Source: Oikopleura dioica (lineage: Eukaryota > Animalia > Chordata). From it: a stretch of 64,000 nt of DNA. The notes under the pieces were generated by a model, which saw only the letters and a program-made list of their open reading frames with translations, had not been told where the DNA came from and did no database searches. The stretch covers positions 5,704,001 through 5,768,000 of the forward strand of contig OU015567.1 in the NCBI GenBank assembly GCA_907165135.1, given 5' to 3'. Every line of letters begins with the position of its first letter. Position 1 is the first letter of the stretch. Position numbers and translations under genes: made by a program. Below are positions 4,149 through 46,750 of the stretch, piece by piece.

Positions 4149-4189
<41 letters not shown>

Positions 4190-19700: not shown

Positions 19701-20022
19701 ATTAAACCTAGCGACAACACAGGGAGAACACTCTCACCTTAACAAGAACCCTTATTAAACCTAGCGACAACACAGGGAGAACACTCTCACCTTAACAAGA
19801 ACCCTTATTAAACCTAGCGACAACACAGGAGAACACTCTCACCTTAACAAGAACCCTTATTAAACCTAGCGACAACACAGGGAGAACACTCTCACCTTAA
19901 CAAGAACCCTTATTAAACCTAGCGACAACACAGGGAGAACACTCTCACCTTAACAAGAACCCTTATTAAACCTAGCGACAACACAGGGAGAACACTCTCA
20001 CCTTAACATATTAAACCTAGCG
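4747..20022. repeat. Subtelomeric tandem satellite, 53-bp unit (52-bp GG variant), ~290 copies
   Basis: Unit ACACTCTCACCTTAACAAGAACCCTTATTAAACCTAGCGACAACACAGG(G)AGA repeated head-to-tail; last unit has an 8-bp deletion. Confidence 0.99.
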
Positions 20023-20259: not shown

Positions 20260-22410
20260 TCATTTGTCAACTTCCAAGGAACAAGTGTTTTCTTCCTTTA
20301 TTTCTTTGACTACCGATTCCGGCTGCTTCGAATTTGTAGGGTTCATTCGAACGTCGATCGCCTTCAACACGTCCGGATGATCGTGCTGCGCGTTCGTCAA
20401 GCGTTCTTCATGATAGCTGTCTCGACGTGTTCCGCGAGGAAGAACTTCTGCTGGTTTTCCAAGCTCTTGCTGCAGACTCTCGAGCAAGTGCAGAACGAAG
20501 TCGCCCTAACCTAGGAGCATGTAGTTTCGAGTCGCTTGGAAGTGAAGCGGTAAGTTGTAGACTTCGTTCAAAACCGACAAAAGACGAATAGATGTGGACT
20601 CGTATGTATCTAAATTCAATAGTCCATTTGATGTCTGGTAAAGGCTTAAGATGGTAGAATTCCAAACCCTAACCCTCTCGTAATCAATTGATTGTCCCAA
20701 TCATCCCAAAGCCTTCCTGCTTCTCGTGCTGCGCGATAAAGGCACTGATTTCGCGAACGTAAAAGCCAAACGCGCCCAGCGACTCCGCATCTGATCGATC
20801 GCGACTGTCAACTCTGTATTTCTCCTTGAGTCGGTATCTGTAAAGTGAATTGACGTTGTCGTCGTAGCAAATGAAAGTGCCGGGGATGTCTTCCATCGCG
20901 AAAAGAGTGTCTCGAATGAGATCCGCTTGAGAGACGTTCAAGTAGTCGCCAGCAGTGTTTGAAAACCCGCAATATTTTCCGCGGGCGCGGGGGCCGATTC
21001 CAAAATTTTGCGCGGTTGCGGGCGGGCGCGGGGGCCGATTCAAGAATTTTGCGCGGGTGCGGGCGGGCGCGGGCGGAGGCCCCGCAAAAAATCGCGCCCG
21101 CGGGCGCCCGGGGGCAGGGGGCGCCCGTGACCCTCGCGCCCGCAGGCCCCGCGGGTTCGAGGGCTATGAATCTGCGAATTATAGAAGAATAACTCTCAAA
21201 AAAACCATAATTAAGCTAAAAACTAAGATAATTTGACTTTTTAAATCAATGGGTGTGGGTGGGGTTGGGGACAAAACTGAGATTGATCAACTAAATGTTC
21301 CAAGCCTATGTCAAGCCCCTTAAATCAAAAAATCAAGGAACGGGGCTGAGACGGCCCAAAAATTAACAAACAAGGGGTCTATCGAATCGATAGTATCGAT
21401 AGCTTAGAATGCAATGAGAAAGGTAGATTTCTCTGTTATGAAGAAGTTCTATTGACAATAATGTTCGTCTGGATTCATAATTCAAATCGGCTGATTTTCC
21501 AGTCAAAGATTGCCAAAACGGCCTTTATTTAAAAAAACTGGCCCTTTATTCTTAAATCAAGGAACGGGGCCCATTCATTTTACGCAAAGTTTTTTAGATG
21601 AAAACCCAACATTCTTAACTAGCTTAATTCAATTTATGGTGAGCCCCGGGCGCCCGCGGGCGCGAAAAATTTCCGCGGGCGCGGGAGGGCGCGGGGGCCA
21701 GATCAAAAATTTTCTACGGGCGCGGGCGGGCGCGGGGCCAAATCCGAGATTTCTTGCGGGTACGGGGGCGCGGGCGCCCGTGGCCCCCGCCCGCGGCCCC
21801 CGCGGGGTTCGCGGGCGGGTTTTTCAAACACTGGTCGCCAGAGCCTGTTGCTTTTGCAGGTGTTCTGAAAATTAGTTGGGAGCATTCTTTGTGCAGAGAC
21901 AACATAGATAGAGTATTTCTTTTTGAAGTATTTCTTTTGAAGTTGACAATGAAGCCTGCGTTTTTCTCTCGGCGTCGATTGATAGATCGGCCGCGATCTA
22001 CTCGACGAGATAGAAGTAACCGTGACACTGTTTTGCGAGAGGTTCTCTTTGTTCCGCTCGTTTCGGCTGAACGCTGACTTGTCCATCGACATGACAGAAC
22101 GGAAGGCCGAGTCTTCGTCTTCCTTTGCGCTGGCCATGTCTTTCAGGAACTCAAGGACGGCCGCGTGCCGAGTCAGTTTCGGCTGCACACGACTCCACAT
22201 ATTTTCGAAGACGGCGTAGTTTCTTTGCGGAATGCGCCTCGCTAGATCTTCCTTCAGAAGAGTTGTCGAGCATTGTTCCGATGCGACGAACACTAAAATT
22301 GAGGAATTGTTTGAATTCCTGCTTGTAAGATTTGTACCTGATTTTGTCGTTTCAATCGCCTTGCTCCTGTCGGGGTTTTTGATGTGCAGGCAATGTAGAA
22401 GCTCCTTGCA
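20260..22410 (-). pseudogene. TUBGCP3: Gamma-tubulin complex component 3 pseudogene, internally deleted and interrupted by a hAT MITE
   Basis: KEDLARR...AVFENMW (N-term), SQADLIRDTLFAMEDIPG, FGMIGQS and LLSVLNEVYNLPLHFQATRNYMLLG*GDFVLHLLESLQQEL match recalled GCP3 motifs; in-frame TAG, frameshifts, large internal deletion. Confidence 0.8.
20953..21833. mobile_element. Non-autonomous hAT-type MITE, 881 bp
   Basis: TIRs CAGTGTTTGAAAA(A)CCCGC; perfect 8-bp TSD GTCGCCAG (20945-20952, 21834-21841); GC-rich GCGGGC subterminal repeats; no transposase ORF. Confidence 0.93.
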
Positions 22411-22454
22411 GCTAAAACAAGGCCTTCTAAAAATGAATCGCGCTTTCGAATTCA

Positions 22455-22659
22455 CCTACGCCAAGATTCTATAAGCTTGTGATCGAAGCAGTGAGCTGTT
22501 TGAGGCCGTTGTGCGCGAGAATGAGCTCGGAGAGGTGCTGCAGTTGGCTGAAGTCGGAAGAAATCTGCGTCAGTTGGTTGATGCTCTTGTCGCTGAGAGA
22601 AAGACTGTTGTGTCTGCTTTTCTTGTTTTCTTCAACAAGTTTGCGACCTTGCTCGACAT
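22455..22659 (-). pseudogene. RSU1: RSU1-like LRR protein, 5' fragment
   Basis: MSSKVANLLKKTRK...LSELILAHNGLKQLTASITSL*NL resembles the RSU1 N-terminus; in-frame TAG, then truncated. Confidence 0.6.
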
Positions 22660-22801
22660 TCTGAAATTAAGACGAATGACAACAGCTTCAAAGCTTGTAA
22701 AAATCAACCATCAACGCATTCAAATCATCTAGTAATTTTACAAGCTTGGGCCTTGAGTACTTGGATAGTTATCTTTTTGAAGAATGAAGTTAGGCCAGAG
22801 C

Positions 22802-23440
22802 TTAGAGCATGCCCTGATGAGTGTCGACCGCGTGCTAGACTGAGTAGTACCACTGCATCAGCTCGGGACTCTGTTCGTACTGCTCCCAAGCGCTCGTTCC
22901 TTTCGTCAAGTTGATAACTGCAAAAGCTTCGATATCCGCCGATATATGGAGGGCCGCTCTCCGCCGAGGAAACGCTCTTCGCCCTTTCGCTCCAGAAATT
23001 TAGCAATTTGGCTTTGGCAGTATTGCTCGCGCGTTTGCTCTGGAAACTCTTTCCAAACGTGGAAGATACAAAACCAAGCGATAAACATCAGTCCAAGGCC
23101 ACCAGCAACAGCGCATACTTTGCCAGTCACCGTGTCTCTAAACAAACAGTCAGAATCATCATGCATCCGCCACTGTAGCAACCTGTAATTGTCGGATTTT
23201 TCCAAAAACTTGAGCTGATTTTGAATGGCTCTCGAATCAGCGGGGTACAAATTTGGCGCCACCGTGTGAAGAATTCCGTCTTGAACGAATTTCCTGTCTG
23301 GATCTGTCCATCTTTCGTCTAGATCGGTGTGCGCCTTGCAGCCGAAATACCCAAATAAACGCACTTTCTTGTTCGAGTTCCAATATTCAATCGTTCCAAA
23401 GGAATCTTCGATTATGTAGCTTCTATCTTTGGCCAACACA
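22802..23440 (-). pseudogene. PTGES2: Prostaglandin E synthase 2-like (GST fold) 3' fragment
   Basis: RKFVQDGILHTVAPNLY, FLGGERPS, then ADIEAFAVINL...LMQWYYSV in a shifted frame (AT duplication); premature TAG. Confidence 0.65.
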
Positions 23441-23903
23441 TTTCTCGATTCCTTCTCGTTCCAGAAGAGCTTTCAATCGCTTTAAAATCACCTCGAATCC
23501 AATCGTTCCCAGGCAACTTCCCAGGCGACATCCTAAAAAAGCTTTTTAGGACTTGTTAAAACTCAACTGTAGTTACATTAAATGTGGCTTGGCATTTGTC
23601 GTTCGTCTTTAATCCTGGGGCAACTTGTTCGAACACGGAGACTGCTTTTTTACTCGTTGGCATAATCAGTTCGTCGGGTTCGCCTGAATTAAACGTTTCT
23701 CAACTCGAAATCAAGGAAGACACTCACCTTCGAAGCCTGGCACTTTGACAAGATCGCCCGGAACTGCTCCAGCTGGCGGGGCCAAGATCTCGACTTTCTC
23801 TGGTGTAGAAGCGCACATGATCATTGCTTCGGTAACGATTCCTCTCATTTTCGCCGGCTTGAAGTTGCACAGAAGGACGACCATTCTGTTCTTCATCTAT
23901 TGC

Positions 23904-25526
23904 GGGGTAAAAGCATAATGCTCCGAACTCCATCCGCCAGAGGGCGCTCGGAAAAAGAGGTGGAAGAGCGGAAATGACCTTGAAGAGCGCTCTTTGCAGG
24001 GAGCCGGAGGAGAGTACGCTGAGGAGCGCCGAGGGAGAACCTCCGGAGAGTACACACCGGGTGAGCAAGTACGGAAGGGAGCGCGAAGCCACCTCAACCC
24101 AGCGTGAAGTGTGTCAATCTCTGTTCAAACACCGCTATCATTTCTGATCACGTAGTACCCCCTGAATGAGCTTAATTTCGCTTAACTGATTTTTCACGCT
24201 CTTTTTTTTAATTATTTATATACTTAAACATCTTTTTAGAGTGAAATTTTGCGCTGAATCTAAATAAAGGGTCAAAAACACTAAATTTTGATGATAAATT
24301 TAAAAAACATAACTCTCAGGCTCAGGGTGGCACAACTTGTCGAATTTAAGTTTGATAATTAACGTTTAATTATTAAACTTTGATTTGAAATTTATTGAAT
24401 AGGAGCATGAGATTTTGGGTCTTATTTTTAAGGGGTTCACCAATCTAGGAACACTTATCATCGATCACAAAATGAGGGAAATAGAATTATGTTCGGTTAA
24501 ATCCATTTTCTGCTCAAAAAGAGCTTTCTTCTGATATATATATGCCCAAAGAAACAACGCCATCACTCTGGAAGGGTTCCTCTCGTGGCCATTTCGAGAA
24601 ATGTACCTCTCGTGGTCATGCACCTCTCGTGGCCATATACCTCTCGTGGTCGTCACGTACACTTTCGTCAGAATCTTATCAAATGACCACCAGAGGAACA
24701 TGGCCACCAGAGGTACATGACCACGAGAGGTATTTTCACAAAAGCTCATTATCGGGTTCTCTCTTCCTATTTAATCAATTCTCTGGCGAATTTCAGACAA
24801 ATCTTCTTCTGCAATAAATTTAATTTAATAATATCCAGAGCTTTTGCTGCACTTCTATACTTCTCCCAACAAAAATATCAATGACTTGCTCGAACATTCC
24901 CTCCTTTGATGCTTTAAAATCGTTTGATAAAGCCTAAAAATTTTATAAAATGTTGAATAAATGGATATTCTTTCCATTTGATTTTTGTCAATAAAATAGA
25001 GTTATAAAATATAACAGAGTTGTTAACAGAGTTCCATGCTATGGTGAAAATTGATTGAATAAATTTGCCAGACAATTGATTAAATAGGAAGAGAGAACCC
25101 GATAATGAGCTTTTGTGAAAATACCTCTCGTGGTCATGTACCTCTGGTGGCCATGTTCCTCTGGTGGTCATTTGATAAGATTCTGACGAAAGTGTACGTG
25201 ACGACCACGAGAGGTATATGGCCACGAGAGGTGCATGACCACGAGAGGTACATTTCTCGAAATGGCCACGAGAGGAACCCTTCCCATCACTCTTACTCGC
25301 CTCTAGAATTGATAATAAAGTTGATACTGGCATGGGTAGAACAAAAATATCCCCTCCGCCCCTGCTGTGCTCACTCACTCCCAGGTGTTACGTTCGAGTA
25401 GCGTATTGAGGGCTTATCGCCAACTCATCAGTTCTCCCTGGGCTCGCAAAGTTCGGAGGACTCAGAGTCCTCCGCGCATCTTGCGCCCTCATGCGAGAAG
25501 AGTTCGGAGCATTGTGCTCGACATCC
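23904..25526. mobile_element. Non-autonomous TIR element with GG termini and 8-bp TSD (superfamily uncertain, Merlin-like)
   Basis: TSD TCTATTGC at 23896-23903 and 25527-25534; imperfect 27-bp TIRs GG......AGCA(T/C)AATGCTCCGAACTC. Confidence 0.75.
24570..25284. mobile_element. Mutator/foldback-like MITE, 715 bp, nested in the element above
   Basis: ~220-bp near-perfect TIRs starting GGAAGGGTTCC and built of CCTCT(C/G)GTGG(T/C)CA modules; 9-bp TSD CATCACTCT (24561-24569, 25285-25293). Confidence 0.9.
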
Positions 25527-26589
25527 TCTATTGCAAGGGAACATGCTTGACAAGTCCGGAAATGACGGTTCGTGGTTTATCCTCTCCGCATTCAATTAGT
25601 TCGAGGTATAAAGCGTCCGCATCTGAAAAAAAGAGAGTCATTTGAGCGATTTATTGTCCTGGAGGAGTTGTTCTTGGATATTTGAGAAGGCTAAATTTTG
25701 AAAAGAATTAACGCCTTTAGAGATAAGTTTAACTTCCTTTCTTAATACAAAGATAAAAAGTTCTGAACTCGAATCTCCCGAAAACAAAATAATACAATTT
25801 TCCAAATACCTGGGTGTTTTCTTGCAGTCGATGATCTTTCCCACCTTCATCAACAACCTCGAAACATCGACTGGCTTCTCTGGTTCGGCCGCTTTCGCTG
25901 GCTGAGGCTTCTTTTCCTTCTTTTCTTTCTTGGGCTTGTCCTTTTTCTGGTTTTCGTTCTTTGGCTTCTCCTGCTGTTCGGCCTTCTTTGGCTCCTCTTT
26001 CTTTGAGGCTTCATTTTTAGCTGCTCCTTTCTTTTGTGGCTTTGGAAGAGCGACTTGAGTCTTTCCGTTTCGAAGCTCAAGAGTTGTCAATTCCGTTTTC
26101 AACGCTTCGACTTGTTTTCTGAAACGGCGTTGAGCGATAAAGGATCTCCTGCTTCAAGATCGTCTCCTGAATGTTAGCAGGAAGCGTGCCCATCGCCTTG
26201 ATCGCGGCGATCTTTTCCGTCAGTGTTTGAATGATCTTGTCGGCTTCGACGGATCGCGCCTCAAGCTCGGCCGCGCTGAGAGCCATGGTTCGAGAGAGAC
26301 TTCTAAAAAGGCACACTCTGGTCAGCATTTACTCGGTTTTTTCTGAAGTCGGAAATTTTTTCTTTTGATTTTAGAATTTTATTTTTAGGAAAGCAGTTTT
26401 TAAGCATTTGAAATTGTTTGGCAGTATCGAATATTCAGAAATATACGGAAGCGGAAAGGCGGAAATAGAATGGCTGAAATATGTACAAGAGAAGAAAGGG
26501 AGGGTGTTAGGAAAATATTGGAAAATTGCGTTTGTAAGGACTTGAAACTTTAAAGAAACTCCTGGCTCAGAGAAGATTGAAGGAATGGC

Positions 26590-27630
26590 TTTTTCACGGG
26601 GCTGGAGCTGATGTTCGTCCACAGGCCGCCGCACATCGAGCGCTTGAGGAATCGGTGGTCCCAGCCCGAAATCAGCGATTCCTGACGATCTGCAAGCAGT
26701 TACGTTAGCGACAGAGAGACTGCAAGCGAACTTACTGTAGGTGTACGCTCCGGAGCGCGAGCAGTGCCTTAGATCTCGAGTTTCTTCGCGTCCGACAATT
26801 GTGCGGCGCACGAAATCGGTGTCCACAACCATCAAGGCGGCCCGTTTCGTCTCCGACTTGCCCACTTGAAAGGTCCGTCCCTTCAGACTCGTAACGTGCG
26901 GCTTCTTCATGCTCACTTCTCCGTCGAGACGCGACACTTTAACAGCTCGCACGAATCGTACAGCTCCCTGAAACAAATCCTAAACCCAGAATCTTTGAAA
27001 AAGCAAAGTAACCTTCATTGGAATGTTTTCGCCGAGTTGCTGGGCCGCAGCCGCTTTTGAAAGAATAGCGTACGATTCAGAGAGCGGGTCGCACTTGACG
27101 TCTTTGATCGTGTAAAGGGGACTGCAGTTGTTGTGCAGAGTAGGAGATGATGTGCGTGGCCATCCACTGGATCAGGTGGCCAACAGATTGGAGGATGCGC
27201 ATGTTCGTTTCGAAGGTATTCATCATTACGTTCAGCAAATCGTCGAGGTTCTCGTTCGAGTCTACAATCTGCGAGAGCCGTTCGCGAAGGTCAAAGTTTT
27301 CTTCATTCAAACTAGCTCCCGTTGGACGGAGGAAACTTATGAACAGCTCCAGAACAGCTGTGGTCAAAAGCTGAAGCAAGAAGTTAACTTTTATTAGCAA
27401 GAACGCTTGACTAACCGTGGATATCCTCGACGAGCGTGGTCAGCGGCGATTGAGCTCTTGAGCTTGGTGATCAAGGCGTTTGCCATCGAGTGATTTTGAA
27501 CCAACAGTCGTGCGTCCCAACAGTCAGTGTCCGAGAGAAGACTGTACTCCAGGAACAGTTGGATAGCTTCTTCTTTCATTTGCACGGGCAGTTCTGCTTC
27601 TAGCCACGGATTCACTGAAATAGTGAGCTT
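26590..27630 (-). pseudogene. MED16: Mediator subunit 16 3' fragment, internally deleted
   Basis: QLFLEYSLLSDTDCWD, FISFLRP...LQSVGHLIQWMATHII and WDHRFLKRSMCGGLW match recalled MED16 motifs; frame disruptions. Confidence 0.75.
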
Positions 27631-27729
27631 TTTGCAAATTTTAAAAAGAGGTCACCTTGCGAAACGTAAGGATTGCTGTTGTTGTCGAGTCATAACAAGG
27701 CGCATTCCGCTATAAATTATATAGCCTTT

Positions 27730-27940
27730 CATAGTGGTATAAGAAAATTATTTTGTTTGGTTTGTACCTGAAGCGTGGTCTGGTCTCTGGAGATCAGGAG
27801 CACGTGATAGGCGGTGAGGGCGCCGAGAGCCAGCGTGATCCAGCGAAGATAGGAATAGCCGACCAGCGAGAAGTAGCCGCAGCCGAACGTCGTCCAGAGG
27901 CAGAAGTTGAAGAAGTAGCGCCGGTTGAAATGGCCGACGC
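27730..27940 (-). pseudogene. ZDHHC16: ZDHHC16 fragment, diverged copy of ~53700-53972 with a 63-bp in-frame deletion
   Basis: Direct nucleotide similarity to the intact locus in this window; source bases 53810-53872 missing; intron retained. Confidence 0.92.
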
Positions 27941-28056
27941 CAAAAGAAAGAAGAACTAACCTTCTGGGAAAAAAGGAAGACTGGGATACGGCCCAGTTTT
28001 GAAAAAGCATTTTCGTCCGGCAAAGCCGCCTTTGAATTGGATTCTCAGCTGGAATT
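27941..28056 (-). pseudogene. NR2C2AP: NR2C2AP exon fragment, diverged copy of ~50511-50630
   Basis: FQLRIQFKGGFAGRKCFFKTGP versus KIQFQGGFAGQKCFFKTGP of the intact gene; nucleotide similarity visible. Confidence 0.9.
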
Positions 28057-28329
28057 TAACGACATTCTTTTCGTTCATAAGCGCCAAAAATTTCGCATTG
28101 TTTTTCAAGCCACAGTTGCATCAATGGCTAAATTTGAGATAATACATTTCATTACGATTCAGCGGAATCTTACACCCAATAATTGGGTCCCAATTTTCAG
28201 GCTGAAGTCTACCTGAAAAGCATTTTCCGAGTCCAAGAAGTTCACCAATCCCGTCGTCTCAACCGAAGCCAATCGCGCAAAAACGAGAAGAAAAGCTTGT
28301 TGAACAGTAAGAGTAGTAGAAGTTCTAGT

Positions 28330-28948
28330 AGTACTAGAATATTGCCACCGGCGACGGAATACGACAAGTCTCGCACGTGATAGCCTCCTTGCGGCTCCAT
28401 GTAGCGGAAAGGCTCGAAAGTGTTGGTCATTCCCGAAGAACCCAGAATTTCATGTTGAAGTAGTCTGCTCCTGTCGCCCGCCTGGAGGATCGAGGTAAAG
28501 TGCTTGCACTGGCTTACTTCCGTGGTTGAGCGCAATGCGGCTCGTTATCGGAAGCGTTATTCTTCGCCCATTGTCTTGCTAAAGTAAGAGTTAGTAAGCA
28601 AGAGTAGGTAAGATTGATTCGATCGACGAAAAATACCTCATCATCTGACTCTGAGTCACTGTCAGAGACTTCCTCTTCTTCTTTCTTCGCATTTTTCTTC
28701 GACTTTTTCGCGAGTTCTTGCATGTTAGGAATGACGAAGCCGGGAGGTAGAGCAGGACCGACATCTTCTCCGTCAGATTCTGGCGCCGGCTCGGCAGGTT
28801 TGGATGGCTTTGATTCAACTTTGCTTACAGTCCGTTTTTTCCGACTTTTGACGATTTTTCTCCTCCTCTTCTCGCCGGGCTAAAGTTTCATGGCTTCTTT
28901 CTTGAGCATCGCTTGGAGATCAAATGTACGCGCTTTTTTCTGACTCAT
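28330..28948 (-). pseudogene. WDR70: WDR70 5' fragment
   Basis: VGPALPPG, IALNHGSKPVQALYLDP, GMTNTFEPFRYMEP...YSVAGGNILV; in-frame TAG, frameshifts, intron retained; truncated. Confidence 0.8.
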
Positions 28949-29194
28949 CCTTTCGAATTCAACCAAAATCGATTTCTAGGATCTCTATTTGACAAGTCCG
29001 AAAATGCGAAATGAAGAGTTAGAACAAAATGTACCGTCGGTTATTGTTTTAAAAAGTTTCCAATTTATTTGGGAATGTGAACAGTAGATGTTAGCAGGGG
29101 ATAAATTGGGTGCGGGAATGTGAAAAGTGAACGTTAGCGACTATTCGTGAGTATATACATTTTATGTGAAGGTGGTGAAAATGGGAAGAAGGAA

Positions 29195-30930: not shown

Positions 30931-31140
30931 CTCCCCCGATTTCAACTGCTAGACCGGGCTTTTCTTTGGAAATAATCAACAAGCGCTACAAAACATGCTT
31001 CTGTATCTGACTTCCTTGCCTAAACATTGATCCTGAAGTTCCTTTTCAATGCAATCAAGAAAGACAAACGAATCCTCAGAAGGCTCATACACAGAATTGG
31101 TATAATCATACCATGCTGAATAATCTGGCGTTGGAGGCAT
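30930..31140 (-). pseudogene. N6AMT1: N6AMT1/HEMK2 methyltransferase 5' fragment fused to ANKZF1
   Basis: MPPTPDY...SVYEPSEDSFVFLDCIE...AVEIGGG; similarity ends in the SAM-binding motif. Confidence 0.75.
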
Positions 31141-31232
31141 TCTTAATTTTACGATGTCAGTTTTATTGAAATTTATAATTTGGCAGTATTTTAATTAAAA
31201 TTTATTTTTTTATAATTTATTATTTATTTTTA

Positions 31233-32586: not shown

Positions 32587-32591
32587 CATGA

Positions 32592-33793: not shown

Positions 33794-33842
33794 CTGTGAC
33801 CTTCCATGGGTCCCAAACGAGCATCTTTATCGCCCATCTTTT

Positions 33843-36800: not shown

Positions 36801-38310
36801 ACTCGCTTTGTCGATGTTAATCCGTAAATTATTTTGGTCTAAAATTTGAAATAATTTACGTAAATTGGCTAAATGTTCTTCTTCCGTTCTTGAATGGACC
36901 ACTAAATCGTCAAGATAAGCGCAAATTTGAGTTTTCGGCGTGTCTCGTAAAATAACATCCATGCATTTTGCGAAATGAATAGGGGCATTTTTGAGACCCA
37001 TTGGAAGCCTTTTCCAAGTAAATTGTCCGTCTTCAGTCGAAAAAGCTAGTTTTTCTCGCGATTTCTCATCTACGAGGCACTGATGAAATCCTTTTCGCAA
37101 ATCAACACAAGAAAAAATAATGCTATTTTCTAAATACCCTAAAACGTCTTCAATTTGTTGCAACGGATGATGCTGCTGGAGCGTAAACGAATTTAATTTC
37201 CTGTAATCAATACATAATCTGAATGTACCATTCTTTTTCCTTACGAGTAACGCGGGGCTATTATAGGGTGAATTAATTCGCATTATCATGTCTTGCCCAA
37301 GGTAGGAGGTAGTAGTACCGGTCATTATTCCCCGCAAGGCATATGGCGTTCTGTACATATTGCTACAAATCGGGCGATCAGTCTCTAGTTCAATCGAAAA
37401 TTTTTCAAGGTTCGAAACAGGCAAATTGTCGTCCTCGTCTTGAAATAAATGGGTGTATATAGCAAGAAGACCAAAAAGTACCGGCTTATTCTTTTTCGAT
37501 ATATTCCCTATTTTTAACCGCGAAAGAAGAAAATTAAGATCTTTTTTTGAGGGCTTGATTTGGGCGATCTCAGCTATTTCCGCTAGTTTCGCAAAGGCCG
37601 TGCCAGCAGGAATTTTAACTGTAGAATTCAGGGGATTTATAACAAGAATACGAAAGAATGGATTCTCGGGATCAACTCTCTGGAATGATTCTATTAACTC
37701 TAGCTTCGAATTTTTAAGCTGGCTTTCTTCTAAAAAAAAGATTCATTGATCTGTTCAAATGAGGAATTTTCAAATCGATAATTTGCTCACTTTTGCCTCG
37801 AAATGTGTAAGTTTGCTCAGAAACGGCATAAAAACTGTCTTGCTCAATGTTATTAACTGTTGGGCTTTTTGATGCATTATTACATAAATTCGCCATTCGC
37901 TCTATAGGACCAGATTTAACTAGACGATTTCGATGAAGATTGATCATAATTTCATTAGATTTAAGTGCTTCCGAACCGAGAATTGCCTGACAATTGTCAT
38001 TTACAATATAAAATCGCGATTTACCCCATTTTTCCGTTTTAACATGAAAATCACATTCGACAAAACCAAGAATTTCAATACTTCCTCCACCGTAATTTTT
38101 AGCAAAAATATCAGGGGCTTGAATTTTAACATTATCGGGAATAAATGATTTGGGCAAAAGGTTAAGTTGGGAGCCAGAATCGACGAGCATTTTTATTTTT
38201 TTTGAAAAAACTGTCATTTCTACAAAATATTGTAATCCAATGCGAAAAATTGAACAAGTCCTTGGAACTGGTGCCTGACCAGGGCTTTCAGTTCCATTTA
38301 CTCGTTTTTT
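33843..38310 (-). CDS. pol: Pol polyprotein (PR, RT, RNase H, integrase with long C-terminal extension); one apparent frameshift at ~37735
   Basis: LVDSGS protease, YLDD RT, ETDAS RNase H, HHCC and D-D-E integrase (FDLIG, LDNAK, NGQVE), GPY motif. Confidence 0.95.
38263..38310 (-). promoter_or_regulatory. gag-pol -1 ribosomal frameshift signal
   Basis: A AAA AAC heptamer in the gag frame, 7-nt spacer, TGGAACTG/CAGTTCCA 8-bp stem; the -1 frame is open into protease. Confidence 0.8.
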
Positions 38311-39407
38311 GAAGTTTCTTCTCCCTCGACCCGAGCAGCTCTGTAAATTCTATCGGGATTATCGGGGCAAGCTGTTTTCATGTGGCCTTTTTTCTGACAA
38401 AAATGACAGGTAATAAAGGGGCAATGCGATCTAAAATGAGTGTCTGTGTTACAAAATCCACAAAATCGTCGAGGCCTTGGCCGATCCGGGTTTGGCGCGC
38501 CCAAATTTCGACTTTGAAAATTCCGTTGCTGGTTATTTTGACGCGTCAAACTCTGATCGTTGCGGCGATCAACTTCTAATTTTGCAATTGTTGCCGTTAG
38601 TTTTTCAATTTGATCATGAAGCGCACTCGCCCGCTTTTCCGCCGCCTCTTCTGATTTTTTCTGTTCAATTTTCAATTGAGAAATTTGATCCTCAAAGGAC
38701 ATTGTCGATTTTGAAATTAAGTCGGAAGTCGACTGGAAAAACGAGCCAAGTTTCGCGTCAATTTCGATTTGGGCAATTTTGGGGATAGTCTCATTTCGTT
38801 TTCTTTTGTCAAGAAATTTGGATATTTCCTCGGGTGTTTTTTCAAGCATACACTGATCGCGAAGAAAATTCTGCAGTTCAGGCGTGAGCGATTTTCTAAA
38901 TTGCGCGTCGATAATGTATTCTCTCGCGTCCGGTTTCTGCGTAATTTTCTCCGCGACAGTTTTAACACGTGACAAAAATATCTCGAATTTTTCATTGTTC
39001 TCGCTCTTTCGGGTGAGATTTTCCATTTTTTCTTTGTTTCGAAGGATCTTTTCCTCGGGCGATTCGTCGCCAAAAACAGACGTCAAAAAAGACAATTTTT
39101 CCTCAGCTGATTCAAATCCATAAAGATCTTCCCCGTATTCCCTAAGAAATTCCGGCTCGCATGAATTATAAACAAAAGAGCTTGAAAGGCGCGAAAATTG
39201 AGCCTCGAGGTCCTCTTTGTTTTCGGGTTTATTTTCCGCCAGAGATTTTTCAAAAATCCATTTTGCACGCTGTAATTTGTCTTTAATTGTAGAATTAATC
39301 AAATTGAATTCGAAATTTCTCATTCCTAATCTAATCATCTGATTTGGGGAAACCGAAAAAAGCGCATGACTCTTGTACAGTACCTCTTCAGGAGTTGGGG
39401 TCACCAT
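38298..39407 (-). CDS. gag: Gag with two CCHC zinc knuckles
   Basis: CGFCNTDTHFRSHC and CHFCQKKGHMKTAC; 369-aa ORF from the ATG at the LTR edge. Confidence 0.93.
   Translation of the reverse strand: MVTPTPEEVLYKSHALFSVSPNQMIRLGMRNFEFNLINSTIKDKLQRAKWIFEKSLAENKPENKEDLEAQFSRLSSSFVYNSCEPEFLREYGEDLYGFESAEEKLSFLTSVFGDESPEEKILRNKEKMENLTRKSENNEKFEIFLSRVKTVAEKITQKPDAREYIIDAQFRKSLTPELQNFLRDQCMLEKTPEEISKFLDKRKRNETIPKIAQIEIDAKLGSFFQSTSDLISKSTMSFEDQISQLKIEQKKSEEAAEKRASALHDQIEKLTATIAKLEVDRRNDQSLTRQNNQQRNFQSRNLGAPNPDRPRPRRFCGFCNTDTHFRSHCPFITCHFCQKKGHMKTACPDNPDRIYRAARVEGEETSKNE
39397..39406 (-). promoter_or_regulatory. Primer-binding site, probably tRNA-Trp
   Basis: TGGTGACCCC directly after the 5' LTR; matches the recalled 3' end of eukaryotic tRNA-Trp. 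Confidence 0.75.
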
Positions 39408-40603
39408 GATACGGAAGCGGCTGTCCTGCAAGAATTTTGCTCGATCTCTAACTCTAGAATGCCAAGCCAAAATAACGAGAATCAAATTTTAAATTTGCGT
39501 GGTTTTATTTGTGATTTGAATGACGGAAAAAGGCGCGACGCGGGGTTAAATAGCAGCGAGATTCGATCAGTGTTTTTGAGCAAGCGGTTGTTTTTGAAAA
39601 ACAATTTTTCTATCGAAAACAAGGAAGAGAGCCCGCGGCTTCTTTTAGCGGTTTTTCTTGCGGGAAATCCTTTCGGATCGATTTCTTTTCGGAAGAGGAG
39701 CTGGTCGAACTTGCCAAGCAAGTTATTTTCAAAGGTTTCGGGAGCCGGCGCCGCGCGTGACGAGATAAAACGCAAATTAATTATTATTTTTTATAATAAA
39801 AGCAGAAAATAATAACAGCCACTTAAACTTCTCACTATGTGACCGTAGAAGTGACTGTTAATTATGATTGAAATAAATAAAGGATGAGAAAAGTAAAAGA
39901 ATATATACAAAATTTTAACAAATAAATTGAATAAAATTTGGTCAGGATTTTATAAAATAAATTTATCAAAATTGAAATCATAGAAGAAGCAAATTCCAAG
40001 GAACATACCCGGGGGAAGTTACTGTCGCGGTTCGCACCGTATCTTCTCTTACGGATGAGCTAGTTTGCGACAAGCGGACGCACTGACAGAGAGTTTGTCC
40101 GACCCCACGGCACCGAGATGATACGACGGTTTATCTGCTCGTTGGAGTTGTTGTTGTTGAAGAAGGTGTTGACGGCTATTCTGTTGTAGACTTTGAATCG
40201 TATGTACTGTCAATAATCGAACTTTAAAATCGCAAAGCAATGATAAGAAATATCAATAAATAGATTAAACATGCGGTTTTGCGAATTGCATATTTTTGAT
40301 GAATTGACGTCAGATCGCATTATGATGAGAGCATATGAGCATTCCAATGATAGAACGTATAGATCGTAAGGAGATGACATGATGATAAGACAATTTTGGG
40401 TCAATCTGGCTCGTTAAAACTGACCATCTTTTCATTTTAAGTAGAATATCGTGAAATGATTTTTGCAAATATGTCTGATCAATTTGGTGATACCAAGCTG
40501 ACAAGACAAATTTAAACTAGCGTAGAACCGAATTGGCGTAAATATTTGGCCGTGAAATAAAAATTTTTTATTTGGCTTGAGGCGTTGTTCCCTAAGGATA
40601 TCA
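39407..40603 (-). repeat. 5' LTR (1197 bp)
   Basis: Direct repeat of 32592-33793. Confidence 0.96.
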
Positions 40604-43579
40604 CATGATGGAGCATCTCACACCGTTGAAGCAAATGAGAATATCTCCAGCACGAAGACCAGCTTTATCTGCTAACGACCCCGGGACAACCTCGCTGATG
40701 TGGATTCCTGCTTCGCTATTTTCGCTGAGCCTGAATCCAATTCTACCCTTAATGTTCTTCACATCTTTGATGAAGATTGTTTTCTCGTCATATTCTTCTC
40801 GCGTATCCCTTGTCTCCACGGACGAAGTGATGCTTCTCGGAGGCTTTCGAGCTGCAGAAGGAATAATTTTTGGATGTTTTTTCTTCATCGAAATCGGCTT
40901 CTTTTTTGATTTAGATGGCGATGGTGACTTCTCTGGTGATCGTAATTTGGTGAGCTTCGACATGCTAGCTGTTGGCGATCTATTTCTTCTCCGAGGAGGA
41001 CTTTGCGGTCGACGAACTTCCTCATCCTCGCTCGAGTTCAAGAAGCTCATGCTAGCTGTTGGCGATCTATTTCTTCTCCGAGGACGACTTTGCGGTCGAC
41101 GAACTTCCTCATCCTCGCTCGAGTTCAAGAAGCTAGAAAGATCAGCATCTGGTGGCATCGCTGGAGGTGTTAGATTCTTGCTGCACGTTGGTTCGTCATG
41201 CCTCAATTTCGCACTCTTTTCTTTCATTGCTTTCTTTTCACTTTGCTTCATCTTTCCGACGCCTCTTATTGGACTGTCATTATCAAATGCAGAAGACAAG
41301 TCCGAAATCTCGCTCAGGGCATCTCTTCCTGGACGACGAGGAATGGTGTTATCCACAGCTGGCTTAAGAATCGTCGGCTTTGACGCGCTTTTCTTAGGCG
41401 TTATATTTTCCTTCTCGTGCTTGCTCCTTTTCGCTGCGTGATCTTTCGTGCTTGCTTCGCCCTGCGCGTCCTTTTCAGGAGTCTGAAGCTTTCTCTTGTT
41501 TGAGGTGGGAAACATAAATTCGCGAACGTCCTCTCTGTCAATTGGCGCGGGTGGGAATTGATCATGTTCAGGCGATAGTGCTTGACGATCCTCCGCAGAT
41601 TCATCGAACAAAGCTTGCTGCGACCAGTTATTAGCTGACTCCTGCTCTTCTCGTGGCTGCGAGCGTTCATGACTTTGCGATTTTGAAGCTTTAGATTTCG
41701 AAGGTCCCGGATTTTCTTTTGCAGGCTTTTCCGCTACTGGAAGAAGCTTTTTGAAACGGCTTGATGATCCTGGAACGGGCTTCGAAAAATCCACCTTCGG
41801 TACTTTTGGCTCCCAAGAAGTCGCATTTTCAAGTTCTCGATGCAAGGGATCGCTCGAATCTCGTGCTCGGTATGTTCTTGAACTAAAAGCCCTCGCGAAT
41901 TCCAGACGTCTACTAATACCGCTAGCTTGTAATTTTCGAAGGGCTCTAGCCAAAGATTTATTCAACTCGTCGCGCGTTGGTTTTGCTCTCGATCTCGGCA
42001 TTTTTCTGTTAACTCTTTTTGAGAAAAATTCGCATTCGGTACTTTTGGCTCCCAAGAAGTCGCATTTTCGAGTTCTCGATTCAAGGGATCGCTCGAATCT
42101 CGTGCTCGGTTTCTTCTTGAAATAAAAGCCCTCGCCAATTCCAGACGTCCACTAATACCGCCAGCTTGTAATTTTCGACAGGCTTTAGCCACCGATTCTT
42201 TGACCTCATCACGCGTTGGTTTTGCTCTCGATCTCGGCATTTTTCTGTTAACTCTTTTTTGCTGTTTAGCCTGATCTATTTCAGCATTCCTCGTCGGCGA
42301 TTTGAGCTTCGCAAAGTAATCGTCATCTAAATCCTCGTCGAAAGTCTTCTGCGTGGCTGAGGCTTGCTCCAAGGTTGGAGAAGTGGGAGGCGTAAAATAT
42401 TTTTCATTAGTCCCTTGTGACTCTTCTTGAGGTTGAAGTTGAATTGCTGATGTTGACTCTTGTCGATTTTGAGTTGCTTGGGTTGACTGTTGTGAGTCGA
42501 GAGCAAGCGCTGTGTGGTTTAAAAGATCGCCCACTCGCTGGGTCTGGTTTATCCCTTCTTGTGACTTCTTCTTTCTTTCTTCTTGAGACTCTTCGGCGCA
42601 TAAGTTCAGCGCATCGTGAGTTCTCCTTTTTCTCCCTTCAGTCTCTCGTAGCGTCTCTCCAGAAGTCTGTGACCAGAAATCTTTCATTTCGACCTTTTTC
42701 GATCTCCCTGTCGTATCTCCCGAGGACGCCATGAATATTTCCGGGGTATCCATCGATTCTTCCTGATTTTCATTGAAGAGGCGTCGACGAAGCTTTCTCG
42801 GGGGCTGTGGAGGTGAAGCGGGTGCTGATTGATCAGTATTACTGGGCGATTTCGGTCGACTCTTTTCAGGCGTTTTGTAGACGGAGGAGCCTTGAGAAGA
42901 GTTGGCTTCTTCTTCGTCTTGCTGGGAAATCTGCGCAGTGTCCATTGGCTGCAGCTCATCATCGAAAAGTTCTCCGCTGACGGAGAGGGAGATCTCTGGA
43001 TCCGAAGGCACCTCATTATCGAAAAGTTCTCCGCTGACTGAGAGGGAGATCTCTGGATCCGAAGGCACGTCATCATTGAGTAGTTCTTCTTGACTAGTTC
43101 TTTGAGAAAACTCAGCAGCTCGCTCCATCATCTCATATCGGCTCAGTTGAGAAGGTTGAGTTTCCTGAGTTTCCCGGCCATCGGTGCTCTTCTGAGATTG
43201 GAGAAGCTCCGCTAACGGTATTCGAGGGGGGAATCTCAGTTGATTCCTTTGGAGAACTTGTCTTTCGTTGGGGAATCGGCGCTATAATTCGAGTTTATTT
43301 TCAATATTTATTTGATCGCTTACTTGGCTCGGGATCAAGATTTGGGGCCACCTTTGAGTTGGATGATTTGTTAGAAGTCTTCTCCGGCGATTTGAAGTGG
43401 GGTGAAGGCTGCGAAAACTCAGCAGCTCGTTCCAGCGGGGGGATATCTACGCGGAATTGCATGAAAATACGTCAGCTGGCTTTAATTTTACCTATTTCTG
43501 AAGATTCACCCTGGTCAATGAGACGCTCTCCCGAATTATCATCCGACGAAGGGGATTCGTCACTCTCTTTTCGTTTCAT
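40604..43579 (-). CDS. 5' part of PDZ + CTCF-like gene: SQ/TQ-rich disordered region and most of a PDZ domain
   Basis: ORFs 41962-43131 and 40601-42055; GRIGFRL...IHISEVVPGSLADKAGLRAGDILICFNG PDZ motif continues in frame across the TSD; 1-nt shift at an A-run near 42016-42020. Confidence 0.75.
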
Positions 43580-43792
43580 TCTCAATCCGATAGCGCACTG
43601 TCTGAACAAAAAATATGGGATCCTTTCTCTACTCGATTCTCGAAAAATGAGTATTTTCAAATGATGCTCCGACTCGCCTTGATCGCAGTCTCTCGATCAG
43701 ATAAAAAATGATCGTTTAGACATGGACGAATCAAAGAGTAGAAAGAAAGAAAGATGTTTTTGGACATTCAAATTGGCAGTAATCGGTTTTTT

Positions 43793-44420
43793 TTAAAAAG
43801 AAGGACTCGTTGCTTGAAACTCCTTGAGGCTCTTTCCCATTTGCTCCGCGCGAAATATCACTTCCGCTTCTTCATCCAACGCCGGTTTTCGCCATTTTCG
43901 ATGATCTATGTCCGCCAGTCCGCCGAGAATCTCTCGCATAAAATAAGGAGGGAAGCGTTCGCTATTCTCGACGATGTGAGCGAATCCTCCGCCACCGCCA
44001 AATTCGACGGCAATATGACCTAAAATCAATTCACCTTTGTTTCTCATCATTTTCTCACCTTATTGATGGGGAACTTTTTTGAAGAGATCTTTGAGGCCTC
44101 CTCTTTTGATGATGTTCATTGATGCCGCCTTCATCAGCGCCATATCCGAAGCTAAAAAAATACCTTGAAGACATGGAAGACTATCATGAAACTAACCCAT
44201 TCCTCCATCGTCATTCTTTTCATCACGAAGAAGAGCAGAAAAAACAGACTCGCGTTTCTGGTTACTTGGACGGATTGGACCACGGGCATCGTATTATTGA
44301 ACGACGATTGTGTTTTCATCTGGTAATTCGTCGATTTCTTTTTGAATTTTCGCAGCGTTTTCTTTGTTGCCTTTGAGATCGGCACGCATCAGCATTCCAG
44401 TGAGTTTGTTTCTGATTTCT
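43793..44420 (-). pseudogene. CWF19L2: CWF19L2 fragments with large internal deletion
   Basis: RNKLTGMLMRADLKGN and HIAVEFGGGGGFAHIVENSERFPPYFMREILGGLADIDHRKWRK; stops and frameshifts. Confidence 0.75.
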
Positions 44421-44574
44421 TTGATTTCAGCAGCAGCTAAATATTAGATAGATTATACAGTATAAATTATATAGTATAATTTATACAGTATAATTATACT
44501 CCAATAAGAGTGACTTACATTTGCCCTCATGCTTGAATCTTTTCTTAGGCCTACTTTCAGGCTCAACTTCTGCC

Positions 44575-45745
44575 TCTCACTCCGCCGGTTGACGTAAAGA
44601 ATAGCGAGCTCGGTAAAGATGCCCATGTAAGCGCGATCGAGGCCAAGGGCGCCTTCAATCATAGTGATGAGTTCCTCAAAGAATCCACGATCCTGATAAT
44701 AGCTCATAAGATCGTCGAGTTCGTCAGTGAGGAGAGTAGAAGCAAGAAGGATTATCAGCCTTGATGAAGGAATCGATCGATCGAGATTCTTGACATTGTT
44801 GATCAAGACTTCCATAGCAGAAGTCGTGGCGTCGAACTTCTTGAAGATGGCGAATGCTTCTTCGTAGAGCTCATAGTTGATGCAGATTTCGGCGATGTTT
44901 GGAGCATCGTAGTTGTCAAGTCGAGAGATTTAGTTCATGACGCGGGTAGTATCAGCCTTGACAGCAGTGAGGATGAGCAAGTTCTGCAAGTTTCGATGAT
45001 CGGAGAAGACGGAGTTCTCGAGAACGACCTTTTCCAAAAGCTCGATCAACTCGTTTGGTAAGTCAGCTTCCATGAAAATCTTTTTAGCCACAGAGATTCC
45101 ATCAGGATCCTGAGCCTCACCGAGAGTGGTCTGGACAACCTGATCGATGACAGATCGTCTGTGTGGGTTATCGTCAACAAGAACCTTAGCCCATAGCTCA
45201 GAGTCTTTTCTTTGGACAAGGTTTCGCGCTTCGTTCTTGAATAATGAGTTTTCGTTGCAGACCTTGATGAGTTCGTCGTCGCACATTCCACGCTCGTACG
45301 GAATACATGCGAGATGAGGATCTTGCTTTTCGCAGTATTTACCGACAACAGCGGGTTCTCCCGAAGGAATCGCTCAGGGTTGTTGGCATCAATGTAGATC
45401 TTGGCCAAAGCATTGTGGGTGGCGGGTTCTTGGCAGTCTTCAGCTATTCGCGACTCTAGCCACGGGAGAAGGAGCTAGGACAACCATGATGAGGCTCTTG
45501 ATCACATCTGGCTCGCAGTCGACATCCAAAAGCCCACCAATGACCTTCAGTCGAGATGGGTTAACTTTCTGGACGTAGATCTCGATGTATTTCTGGAGAT
45601 TATTTCTGTAAAGATGGAGAGCCTACTCGTGGACGAAGTCTAATCGATCGCAGACGATTATCAAAGGAATTGGTCCCACATTTTCTGCTCTTTCAAGAAG
45701 TTCTTGACTTTTTCTGGCTCGTAGCAGTTCGATTCTCGGCAGATT
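44575..45745 (-). pseudogene. CLTC: Clathrin heavy chain internal fragment with several deletions
   Basis: [76 protein letters not shown]; TAG/TAA stops, frameshifts. Confidence 0.93.
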
Positions 45746-46073
45746 CGCTCGACTTCCCGTGTCCTCAAACTCTTTAAAAATCGCCTTGAAGTTGTTCCAT
45801 AAGTTGAAAGTCGATTAGATTGTCTGCTGGATTTTCTGGCTCCACTTCGTTCGAGCGATCCAGGATTTCTGAGTACTCGATTTCGCTCATTTCATCATGA
45901 GTCGGATTTGTCGAAGCCATCAACAATTCTAACAAGAGCAGTTTTTTTAGTTGAATTCGCTTTAATTTTGGTTACGGAAAAATCATCTTGAAGAAGTTTT
46001 ACAAGAGGTATTTACAGCAGTAGAGTTAGTTCGGAATTGATTACAAGTTTTTTGGAAAGAAGAAGTACAGATT

Positions 46074-46667: not shown

Positions 46668-46750
46668 TTTAAATTAATCTAAATTTGAAAATCGTCATGA
46701 TTTAGAAAAAATAATTTCTTGAAAGAATGAAAATCTTAAAAAAATAAGTG

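What the first reader, a model, noticed from the sequence alone, without database searches (positions are those of the whole stretch)
20260..45760. Telomere-facing concatemer of at least 12 scrambled housekeeping-gene fragments
Seen: TUBGCP3, RSU1, PTGES2, AIMP1, MED16, ZDHHC16, NR2C2AP, WDR70, N6AMT1, ANKZF1, CWF19L2 and CLTC pieces are packed end to end, all on the minus strand. They retain introns (so the copying was DNA-level), and several retain their ATG and upstream acceptor. Many have serial internal deletions and direct gene-to-gene fusions (N6AMT1>ANKZF1, NR2C2AP>ZDHHC16, AIMP1>PTGES2). Established: O. dioica is reported to lack canonical NHEJ and to rely on microhomology-mediated joining. 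Inference: a subtelomeric capture-and-compaction zone in which transposon-induced breaks repaired by alt-EJ/template switching stitch dispersed genes together. It could be a source of chimeric genes or small RNAs and a local model of genome scrambling.
Basis: partly seen in the sequence, partly recalled or inferred. Interest (0 to 1): 0.82.

Follow-up and report, generated by a model that had tools for sequence, protein, structure and literature searches.

The report
Decaying duplicate of housekeeping gene cluster
Next to the central (presumed centromere) gap of Oikopleura dioica chromosome 2 lies a dead, heavily deleted copy of a row of housekeeping genes; at least four were already neighbours before the decay, so this part is an ordinary pseudogene graveyard rather than a zone that stitches scattered genes together.

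Summary
The gene pieces are real. Ten of the twelve names are backed by tools (CLTC, CWF19L2, ANKZF1, MED16, ZDHHC, AIMP1, PTGES2, RSU1, GCP3, plus NR2C2AP through an in-window parent). WDR70 and N6AMT1 have only weak support. All pieces lie on the minus strand, keep introns and carry internal deletions.

Metagenome contigs with intact genes show MED16-AIMP1-PTGES2-RSU1 in the same order and orientation as the window. The "AIMP1>PTGES2 fusion" is a ~210-nt deletion across the spacer between two genes that were already adjacent. The PTGES2 copy has a 324-nt deletion, a frameshift, a stop codon and relaxed constraint.

This part is therefore a decaying, DNA-level copy of a co-oriented, operon-like cluster. 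It also carries three transposon insertions.

One patch (27.73-28.26 kb) is truly non-collinear. It was copied from two intact genes 22-26 kb away, in permuted order.

Three measurable junctions show only 0-1 nt of microhomology.

The window is OKI2018_I69 chromosome 2, 5,704,001-5,768,000. The "telomere" array borders the published central gap, not a chromosome end.

The junctions among the other seven pieces could not be tested.

The parts
3509..4748 (.). CCTAAC array, 212 copies. It lies directly right of the 500-N gap (3009-3508), which is the chromosome 2 central gap. TTAGGG x10 lies left of the gap, so the two arrays are head to head.
4746..20008 (.). 53-bp satellite, 289 copies, 99% homogeneous
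20263..22406 (-). GCP3 (TUBGCP3) pseudogene. It lacks the first ~10 codons and everything after about residue 626 of 907, and has internal losses. It is 97-99% identical to the intact 5' end on Tara contig L007.
20953..21833 (.). 881-bp hAT-like MITE inserted in the GCP3 copy. It has an 8-bp target-site duplication and terminal inverted repeats. The site is empty in L007.
22472..22659 (-). RSU1 fragment: the start codon and about 62 codons of exon 1 only. The ATG is out of frame with the rest.
22803..23503 (-). PTGES2 pseudogene. Exon 1 is lost. A 324-nt in-frame deletion removes the glutaredoxin CPYC region. There is a 5-nt insertion (frameshift near 22945) and a CAG>TAG stop near 22838. The introns are kept.
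23504..26286 (-). AIMP1 pseudogene. The ATG is kept. There is an in-frame TAG at 25528-25530. The last ~22 codons and the stop codon were lost in the ~210-nt deletion that abuts PTGES2.
23904..25526 (.). 1.6-kb hAT-like element with an 8-bp target-site duplication and internal inverted repeats. It is inserted in an AIMP1 exon that is continuous in L010.
26589..27651 (-). MED16 3' third (central bridge to C-terminus). The 5' two thirds are absent.
27732..27940 (-). ZDHHC exon piece, 93-97% identical to 53701-53972, with a 63-nt in-frame deletion
27942..28262 (-). NR2C2AP-like piece. 27942-28080 is 87% identical to 50511-50649. It ends inside that gene's intron. Further upstream the match is weaker.
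28245..29986 (-). WDR70-like N-terminal third. Support is weak: a single PDB hit at E 0.15, otherwise reading by eye.
29910..30841 (-). ANKZF1 fragment: N-terminal zinc-finger region (by eye) and part of the VLRF1 domain (Pfam)
30979..31194 (-). Possible N6AMT1 N-terminal ~25 codons (weak)
31319..31899 (-). C2H2 zinc-finger array, CTCF-like by eye.
32592..40603 (-). Ty3/gypsy-type LTR retrotransposon. The LTRs are 99.6% identical, there is a 5-bp target-site duplication, and it encodes RT, RNase H and integrase. It is inserted at the end of the PDZ ORF.
40604..43281 (-). 5' part of a PDZ-family gene: a low-complexity region with internal tandem duplications, then a PDZ domain. It is interrupted by the LTR element.
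43796..44443 (-). CWF19L2 fragment: an N-terminal bit (by eye) plus CwfJ_C_2. CwfJ_C_1 was not found.
44456..45891 (-). CLTC fragment covering roughly residues 730-1368 of 1675, with frame changes and an internal loss of about 180 residues
50352..50929 (-). Intact NR2C2AP-like gene, source of the piece at 27942-28080
53509..54395 (-). Intact ZDHHC gene (Pfam DHHC, E 8e-18), source of the piece at 27732-27940

Best explanation
The region is a non-functional, DNA-level copy of one or more co-oriented, operon-like clusters of housekeeping genes. It may be a segmental duplicate, or the abandoned original. It lies 17-42 kb from the central gap of O. dioica chromosome 2.

After losing function, the copy was eroded in three ways:
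- Many deletions of tens to thousands of bases. Deletions inside a gene give the 'serial internal deletions'. Deletions that span the short spacer between two neighbouring genes give the 'gene-to-gene fusions'.
- Point mutations and small indels, producing stop codons and frameshifts.
- Transposon insertions: one LTR element and two hAT-like elements.

All pieces share one strand and keep their 5'-to-3' internal order because they were inherited as a block. They were not captured one by one.

At least one patch (27.73-28.26 kb) was added from two intact genes 22-26 kb away, by a local duplication or template-switch repair event.

Shown: collinearity and decay of MED16-AIMP1-PTGES2-RSU1, the origin of the patch, and the transposon insertions.

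Inferred: that the other seven pieces (GCP3, WDR70, ANKZF1, N6AMT1, the zinc fingers, CWF19L2, CLTC) have the same history, and that intact copies exist elsewhere in this genome.
For: 1. L001 is a metagenome contig carrying an intact PTGES2. It aligns collinearly with window 23698-22658: AIMP1 last exons, spacer, PTGES2, spacer, RSU1 start. Introns and spacers align at 84-95% identity. The window lacks about 210 nt (the AIMP1 end, the spacer and PTGES2 exon 1), 324 nt and 37 nt. It also carries a 5-nt insertion and a CAG>TAG change.
2. L010, L011 and L012 are 15-40 kb contigs of a distant lineage. They carry MED16, AIMP1, PTGES2 and RSU1 in the same order and on the same strand as window 27621 to 22490.
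3. L005 is an intronless RNA contig carrying PTGES2, a full RSU1 and further genes. That is a polycistronic, operon-type transcript.
4. Constraint is relaxed in the window copy. With P0001 as outgroup, there are 6 window-specific and 0 L001-specific amino-acid changes in 180 codons. Nucleotide changes are 17 against 13.
5. L007 shows the intact GCP3 start and an empty site where the window has the MITE.
6. Every multi-piece gene keeps its N-to-C order, and all ~14 pieces are on one strand. If orientations were independent, all ~14 sharing one strand would have probability about 1e-4.
7. O. dioica operons are head-to-tail clusters enriched in housekeeping genes. Gene density falls and repeat density rises near centromeres and telomeres (PMC11067885).
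8. Six DNA runs from three studies hold 80-87% of the sampled words of 25600-31400. The sequence is therefore not private to this assembly.
Against: - Collinearity was tested for only four of about fourteen pieces.
- In the other lineages the gene after RSU1 is a chromodomain gene, not GCP3, and the gene before MED16 is a TIP49 gene. These adjacencies are either specific to the Okinawa lineage or are true rearrangement joints.
- The NR2C2AP/ZDHHC patch is non-collinear and permuted.
- No intact paralogue was located in the same assembly. The searches returned no Okinawa PTGES2 or RSU1 model.
- The lineage of L001 and L007 is unknown, so 'parent' and 'orthologue of the parent' cannot be told apart.
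- No read-level or RNA evidence could be obtained.
Confidence: 0.7

Rival explanations
1. One reading: breaks near a chromosome end were repaired by alt-EJ or template switching, which copied pieces of dispersed genes one after another and built the concatemer piecemeal.
For: - The patch 27732-28262 joins pieces of two genes that lie 3 kb apart and 22-26 kb away, in permuted order. One piece ends inside an intron.
- The RSU1|GCP3 joint contains about 65 nt of unexplained sequence and lies inside both first exons.
- The adjacencies RSU1-GCP3 and X-MED16 are not seen in other lineages.
- O. dioica lacks c-NHEJ.
Against: - Four consecutive pieces are collinear with intact clusters, spacers and introns included.
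- Uniform strand and preserved internal order of every gene are not expected from independent captures.
- Microhomology at the three measurable junctions is 0-1 nt.
- The transposons are clean insertions with target-site duplications, away from the gene-gene joints.
Confidence: 0.17
2. The pieces are parts of real, expressed chimeric genes, as in the public annotation. The annotated models are 1375 aa (PDZ plus zinc fingers and more), 171 aa, 235 aa and 278 aa.
For: - Gene models are annotated on this stretch of OU015567.1.
- Several deletions are in frame (324 nt, 63 nt, and the CLTC loss), so long ORFs persist.
- An oligo-dT metatranscriptome holds 18% of the sampled words.
Against: - The 235-aa model joins a MED16 tail to AIMP1 exon 2 and ends in an out-of-frame stop.
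- The 1375-aa model spans an 8-kb LTR retrotransposon.
- Catalytic or core parts are missing: the PTGES2 CPYC region, most of CLTC, and the GCP3 C-terminus.
- There are stop codons and frameshifts, and excess amino-acid change in the copy.
- The RNA words may come from the intact parent genes.
Confidence: 0.06
3. Assembly artefact: a chimeric or collapsed Nanopore contig next to satellite DNA.
For: The region borders 15 kb of satellite and a scaffold gap. [quoted passage not shown]
Against: Contigs of six DNA runs from three studies hold 80-87% of the sampled 31-mers of 25600-31400. The lesions include clean transposon insertions with target-site duplications and precise deletions.
Confidence: 0.03

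Closest known systems
Unprocessed pseudogene mosaics in pericentromeric and subtelomeric segmental duplications (for example human pericentromeres and subtelomeres; from my own knowledge)
   Same: These are DNA-level copies of gene blocks that keep their introns and spacers. They lie next to satellites or telomere-like repeats. They are riddled with deletions, stops and transposon insertions, and are sometimes annotated as chimeric genes.
   Different: This one is in a 64-Mb genome known for compaction and few pseudogenes. The source is an operon-like housekeeping cluster. The erosion is unusually dense: about 14 genes are reduced to about 14 kb of remnants.
Oikopleura dioica operons (Ganot et al. 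2004, Denoeud et al. 2010, as described in PMC11067885)
   Same: Head-to-tail genes on one strand, spacers of about 90-300 nt, housekeeping functions, and an acceptor just upstream of the start codon. PTGES2-RSU1 occur on one polycistronic RNA contig (L005).
   Different: The copy in the window is dead. Trans-splicing and transcription of the copy were not tested.
Templated insertions and template switching at repaired breaks (Pol-theta end joining, MMBIR/FoSTeS; from my own knowledge)
   Same: The 27.73-28.26 kb patch is built from two pieces copied from nearby genes on the same strand, with little or no microhomology at the joint.
   Different: The pieces are 140-320 nt long and have diverged 3-13% from their sources. 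An ordinary small duplication followed by deletions explains them equally well. The rest of the region does not need this mechanism.
Head-to-head interstitial telomere arrays at chromosome fusion sites (for example human 2q13; from my own knowledge)
   Same: TTAGGG repeats on the left of the gap face CCTAAC repeats on the right, inside a chromosome-scale scaffold.
   Different: Here the two arrays are separated by an arbitrary 500-N scaffold gap. The join was inferred from synteny, so no read has shown that the arrays are contiguous.

Membership tests
Unprocessed (duplication-derived) pseudogene cluster | Introns and intergenic spacers of the source are retained | tested here: met
   The PTGES2 introns and the PTGES2-RSU1 spacer align to L001. 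The NR2C2AP piece ends in that gene's intron.
Unprocessed (duplication-derived) pseudogene cluster | Gene order and orientation match an intact cluster | tested here: met
   MED16-AIMP1-PTGES2-RSU1 on L010-L012, and AIMP1-PTGES2-RSU1 on L001. Not tested for the other pieces.
Unprocessed (duplication-derived) pseudogene cluster | Disabling lesions and relaxed constraint | tested here: met
   Stop codons, a frameshift, loss of the CPYC region, and transposon insertions. Amino-acid changes are 6 in the window copy against 0 in L001.
Unprocessed (duplication-derived) pseudogene cluster | An intact paralogous cluster exists in the same genome | not testable with these tools
   No tool searches the rest of the assembly. 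Protein searches returned no Okinawa PTGES2 or RSU1 model. The only in-window parents are those of the NR2C2AP and ZDHHC pieces.
Processed (retro-copied) pseudogenes | Introns absent, each gene copied singly from mRNA | tested here: not met
   Introns and spacers are present. The 63 nt missing from the ZDHHC piece is coding sequence in the parent, not an intron.
O. dioica operon | Same-strand genes with spacers of at most 500 bp | tested here: met
   About 90 nt between AIMP1 and PTGES2 and about 180 nt between PTGES2 and RSU1 on L001. About 300 nt between MED16 and AIMP1 in the window and on L010. The 500-bp definition is from PMC11067885.
O. dioica operon | Polycistronic transcript resolved by spliced-leader trans-splicing | tested here: inconclusive
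   L005 is an intronless multi-gene contig. It comes from another lineage, and the spliced leader was not examined.
   Four pieces come from neighbouring genes. The two pieces of the patch come from genes 3 kb apart in the same window.
   1 nt at the 324-nt deletion, 1 nt at the 63-nt deletion, and 0-1 nt at the NR2C2AP|ZDHHC joint. Three junctions are too few to judge.
Subtelomere | Adjacent to the terminal telomere of a chromosome | tested here: inconclusive
   A CCTAAC array of 1.2 kb is present. [quoted passage not shown]

The most novel reading that the evidence does not exclude
Beyond the collinear MED16-RSU1 block, the untested joints may be true non-collinear joins like the NR2C2AP|ZDHHC patch. 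These joints are CLTC|CWF19L2, zinc fingers|N6AMT1|ANKZF1|WDR70, and RSU1|GCP3. Such joins would have been made by template-switch repair that copies 100-300-nt pieces from genes tens of kilobases away. The region would then be a natural archive of break repair in a chordate that lacks c-NHEJ, sitting in a fossil subtelomere at a head-to-head telomere junction.
Probability: 0.17. Interest if true: 0.65.

Novelty: new member of a known kind. Interest (0 to 1): 0.35.

Why it matters
- It corrects a tempting reading. The 'fusions' are deletions between genes that were already neighbours, so this block is not evidence for a gene-stitching mechanism.
- The public annotation of OKI2018_I69 models this stretch as chimeric genes, including a 1375-aa model that runs across an LTR retrotransposon. 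These models should be flagged as pseudogenes.
- A dead operon copy is useful in itself. It records the neutral spectrum of deletions, insertions and substitutions in an animal that lacks c-NHEJ and has an extremely compact, fast-rearranging genome.
- The head-to-head telomere arrays at the chromosome 2 central gap deserve a separate look.

Tried and rejected
There is therefore no read-level check of the assembly, of expression or of small RNAs. After that call, no letters of 31199-31237 were sent to any external search tool. Local scripts on the closed machine held the whole window or 20-46 kb as BLAST subject or query. No result from those places is used.
- Locating the intact genes in the same genome failed. 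Word and sequence look-ups in the scan's notes gave nothing useful. The protein searches returned no Okinawa PTGES2 or RSU1. The representative search returned only the window's own chimeric model, plus relatives from other lineages and species.
- Retro-copy origin of the ZDHHC piece was considered, because 63 nt are missing. It was rejected: the 63 nt are in-frame coding sequence in the parent.
- Frameshifts at AIMP1 introns 1 and 2 were considered and not claimed. Non-canonical GA-AG or GG-AG splicing could keep the frame.
- A Y-linked or balanced degenerate haplotype was considered. It is unlikely, because the piece is autosomal chromosome 2.
- The PDB search with the 100-aa WDR70-like ORF gave only a spurious designed-repeat hit.

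Full report
WHERE THE WINDOW LIES

A gene model found by the representative search (P0005) maps to NCBI record OU015567.1 of assembly GCA_907165135.1. The fetched locus L008 is 100% identical to window 37018-15592. The window is therefore Oikopleura dioica OKI2018_I69 chromosome 2, 5,704,001-5,768,000.

From left to right the window holds:
- a 254-bp satellite;
- ten TTAGGG units;
- 500 N;
- 212 CCTAAC units;
- 15 kb of a 53-bp satellite;
- genes from about 20 kb onward.

The 500-N gap falls at chromosome 2 positions 5,707,009-5,707,508. [quoted passage not shown] It says these gaps of arbitrary 500 bp stand for centromeric regions that were skipped (PMC8008620).

So the finding is 17-42 kb from the presumed centromere gap, not from a chromosome end of the published scaffold. 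The arrays face each other head to head. Whether this is a real interstitial telomere junction or two telomere-ended scaffolds joined by synteny cannot be told here.

CHECK OF THE OBSERVATION

Minus-strand remnants of the named genes are present.

Well supported:
- Clathrin heavy chain.
- CWF19L2, through CwfJ_C_2.
- ANKZF1, through the VLRF1 domain.
- MED16.
- A ZDHHC exon.
- AIMP1, through the tRNA-binding domain.
- PTGES2.
- RSU1.
- GCP3, where GCP3 chains are the only significant PDB hits, at residues 238-321 and 570-626.

The NR2C2AP-like piece is supported by 87% identity to an intact gene in the window.

WDR70 and N6AMT1 have only weak, though specific, hits.

Internal deletions are real. 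One open reading frame jumps from clathrin residue 1096 to 1278. Introns are retained.

- a young Ty3/gypsy-type LTR retrotransposon (32592-40603, LTRs 99.6% identical, 5-bp target duplication);
- the 5' part of a PDZ-family gene, which that element interrupts;
- CTCF-like zinc fingers;
- two hAT-like insertions with 8-bp target duplications.

THE DECISIVE TEST: WERE THE SOURCE GENES NEIGHBOURS?

A search with the PTGES2 remnant found intact 318-aa proteins and led to several contigs.

L001 is a 1.6-kb genomic metagenome contig. It aligns collinearly with window 23698-22658. The aligned stretch runs through the last exons of AIMP1, a ~90-nt spacer, all of PTGES2 with its introns, a ~180-nt spacer, and the start of RSU1.

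Relative to L001 the window shows these differences:
- It lacks about 210 nt. This removes the AIMP1 end, the spacer and PTGES2 exon 1.
- It lacks 324 nt, in frame, which removes the glutaredoxin CPYC region.
- It lacks 37 nt.
- It has a 5-nt insertion that shifts the frame.
- It has a CAG>TAG stop.

L005 is an intronless contig with PTGES2, a complete RSU1 and further genes. It is a polycistronic, operon-type RNA.

Through the AIMP1 search, 15-40-kb contigs of a distant Oikopleura lineage were fetched (L010-L012). They carry MED16, AIMP1, PTGES2 and RSU1 in the same order and on the same strand as window 27621 to 22490. One zinc-finger gene on the opposite strand is inserted in that lineage.

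In L010 the AIMP1 exon is continuous where the window has a 1.6-kb element. The window also has an in-frame TAG at that point.

The window copy of PTGES2 is under relaxed constraint. With P0001 as outgroup it has six private amino-acid changes in 180 codons, and L001 has none. Private nucleotide changes are similar, 17 against 13.

For GCP3, the Tara contig L007 shows the intact start codon and an empty site where the window has an 881-bp MITE. Its exons are 97-99% identical to the window.

WHAT THIS MEANS

At least four consecutive pieces descend from a block of genes that were already adjacent and co-oriented. The spacing and the polycistronic RNA are typical of O. dioica operons. Those operons are enriched in housekeeping genes (PMC11067885).

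Block inheritance explains several features at once:
- the uniform strand of all ~14 pieces;
- the preserved N-to-C order within every gene;
- the retained start codons with upstream acceptors;
- the retained introns;
- the 'fusions'.

These features are what a dead copy of such a cluster looks like after many deletions. Because CLTC, GCP3 and MED16 are indispensable in other organisms, intact copies must exist elsewhere in this genome. That is an inference; I could not search the rest of the assembly.

THE EXCEPTION

Window 27732-27940 (93-97% identity) and 27942-28080 (87%) derive from the intact ZDHHC gene at 53.5-54.4 kb and the NR2C2AP-like gene at 50.4-50.9 kb. Those two genes lie 3 kb apart, in the opposite order.
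- The NR2C2AP piece ends inside its intron.
- The ZDHHC piece starts in mid-exon and has a 63-nt in-frame deletion.
- A weaker match suggests the NR2C2AP copy extends to about 28262.

This is a real non-collinear join. It could come from template-switch repair, or from a small duplication followed by deletions.

Microhomology at the three junctions that can be measured is 1, 1 and 0-1 nt. That does not differ from chance.

WHAT REMAINS OPEN

The joints among CLTC, CWF19L2, the PDZ gene, the zinc fingers, N6AMT1, ANKZF1, WDR70 and RSU1|GCP3 could not be tested. In the other lineages RSU1 is followed by a chromodomain gene and MED16 is preceded by a TIP49 gene. O. dioica lineages are extremely rearranged, so this neither supports nor refutes collinearity in the Okinawa genome.

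The RSU1|GCP3 joint lies inside both first exons and holds about 65 nt of unexplained sequence.

ASSEMBLY AND EXPRESSION

Contigs of six DNA runs from three studies hold 80-87% of the sampled words of 25600-31400. This argues against an artefact private to this assembly.

I worked beside those places afterwards. Expression and small RNAs are therefore untested.

The public annotation models the stretch as four chimeric genes. One joins a MED16 tail to AIMP1 exon 2 and ends out of frame. Another runs across the LTR element.

VERDICT

The region is a decaying DNA-level copy of an operon-like housekeeping cluster in a repeat-rich, centromere-proximal setting. That is a known kind of object. It is less expected in this very compact genome, and it is useful as a neutral record of deletion and repair.

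I put 0.7 on this reading for the whole region and about 0.95 for the MED16-RSU1 block. I put 0.17 on piecemeal capture for the remainder.

Noticed in passing
window 2945-4748: TTAGGG x10 and CCTAAC x212 face each other across the 500-N gap. That gap is the published chromosome 2 short-arm/long-arm boundary (5,707,009-5,707,508). This is either a head-to-head interstitial telomere junction at the presumed centromere, which could be a relic of a fusion, or two telomere-ended scaffolds joined by synteny.
   Followed up: partly
window 15592-37018 (= L008, OU015567.1): The public annotation models the pseudogene stretch as chimeric genes. They are a 1375-aa PDZ plus zinc-finger model that spans the LTR retrotransposon, and models of 171, 235 and 278 aa that join remnants of different genes.
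   Followed up: partly
window 23339/23340, 27840/27841, 44456-44929: Three of the three internal deletions that could be sized keep the reading frame: 324 nt, 63 nt, and the ~180-residue clathrin loss. By chance this would happen about 1 time in 27. It is unexplained and may be coincidence.
   Followed up: no
window 20953-21833 and 23904-25526: Two non-autonomous elements with 8-bp target-site duplications (hAT-like). The first has GC-rich 41-bp internal repeats and terminal inverted repeats beginning CAGTGTTTG. The Tara contig L007 shows its empty site.
   Followed up: partly
window 40604-43281: A PDZ-family gene with 87-bp, 239-bp and 57-bp internal tandem duplications, cut by the LTR element exactly at the end of its open frame.
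   Followed up: no
window 46077-46673: An apparently intact cytochrome b558 alpha (p22phox-like) gene lies immediately upstream of the clathrin remnant. It marks the boundary between the live gene cluster (46-55 kb, all minus strand) and the dead one.
   Followed up: partly
L010 11128-12345: In the distant lineage, a zinc-finger gene on the opposite strand sits between AIMP1 and PTGES2. L001 and the window have only a short spacer there, so this is a lineage-specific insertion into the cluster.
   Followed up: no
window 26117-26146 and 25624-25809: The AIMP1 copy stays in frame only if a 28-nt GA-AG intron and a GG-AG intron are used. With the canonical GT donor of the second intron, which the annotation uses, the frame breaks.
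   Followed up: partly
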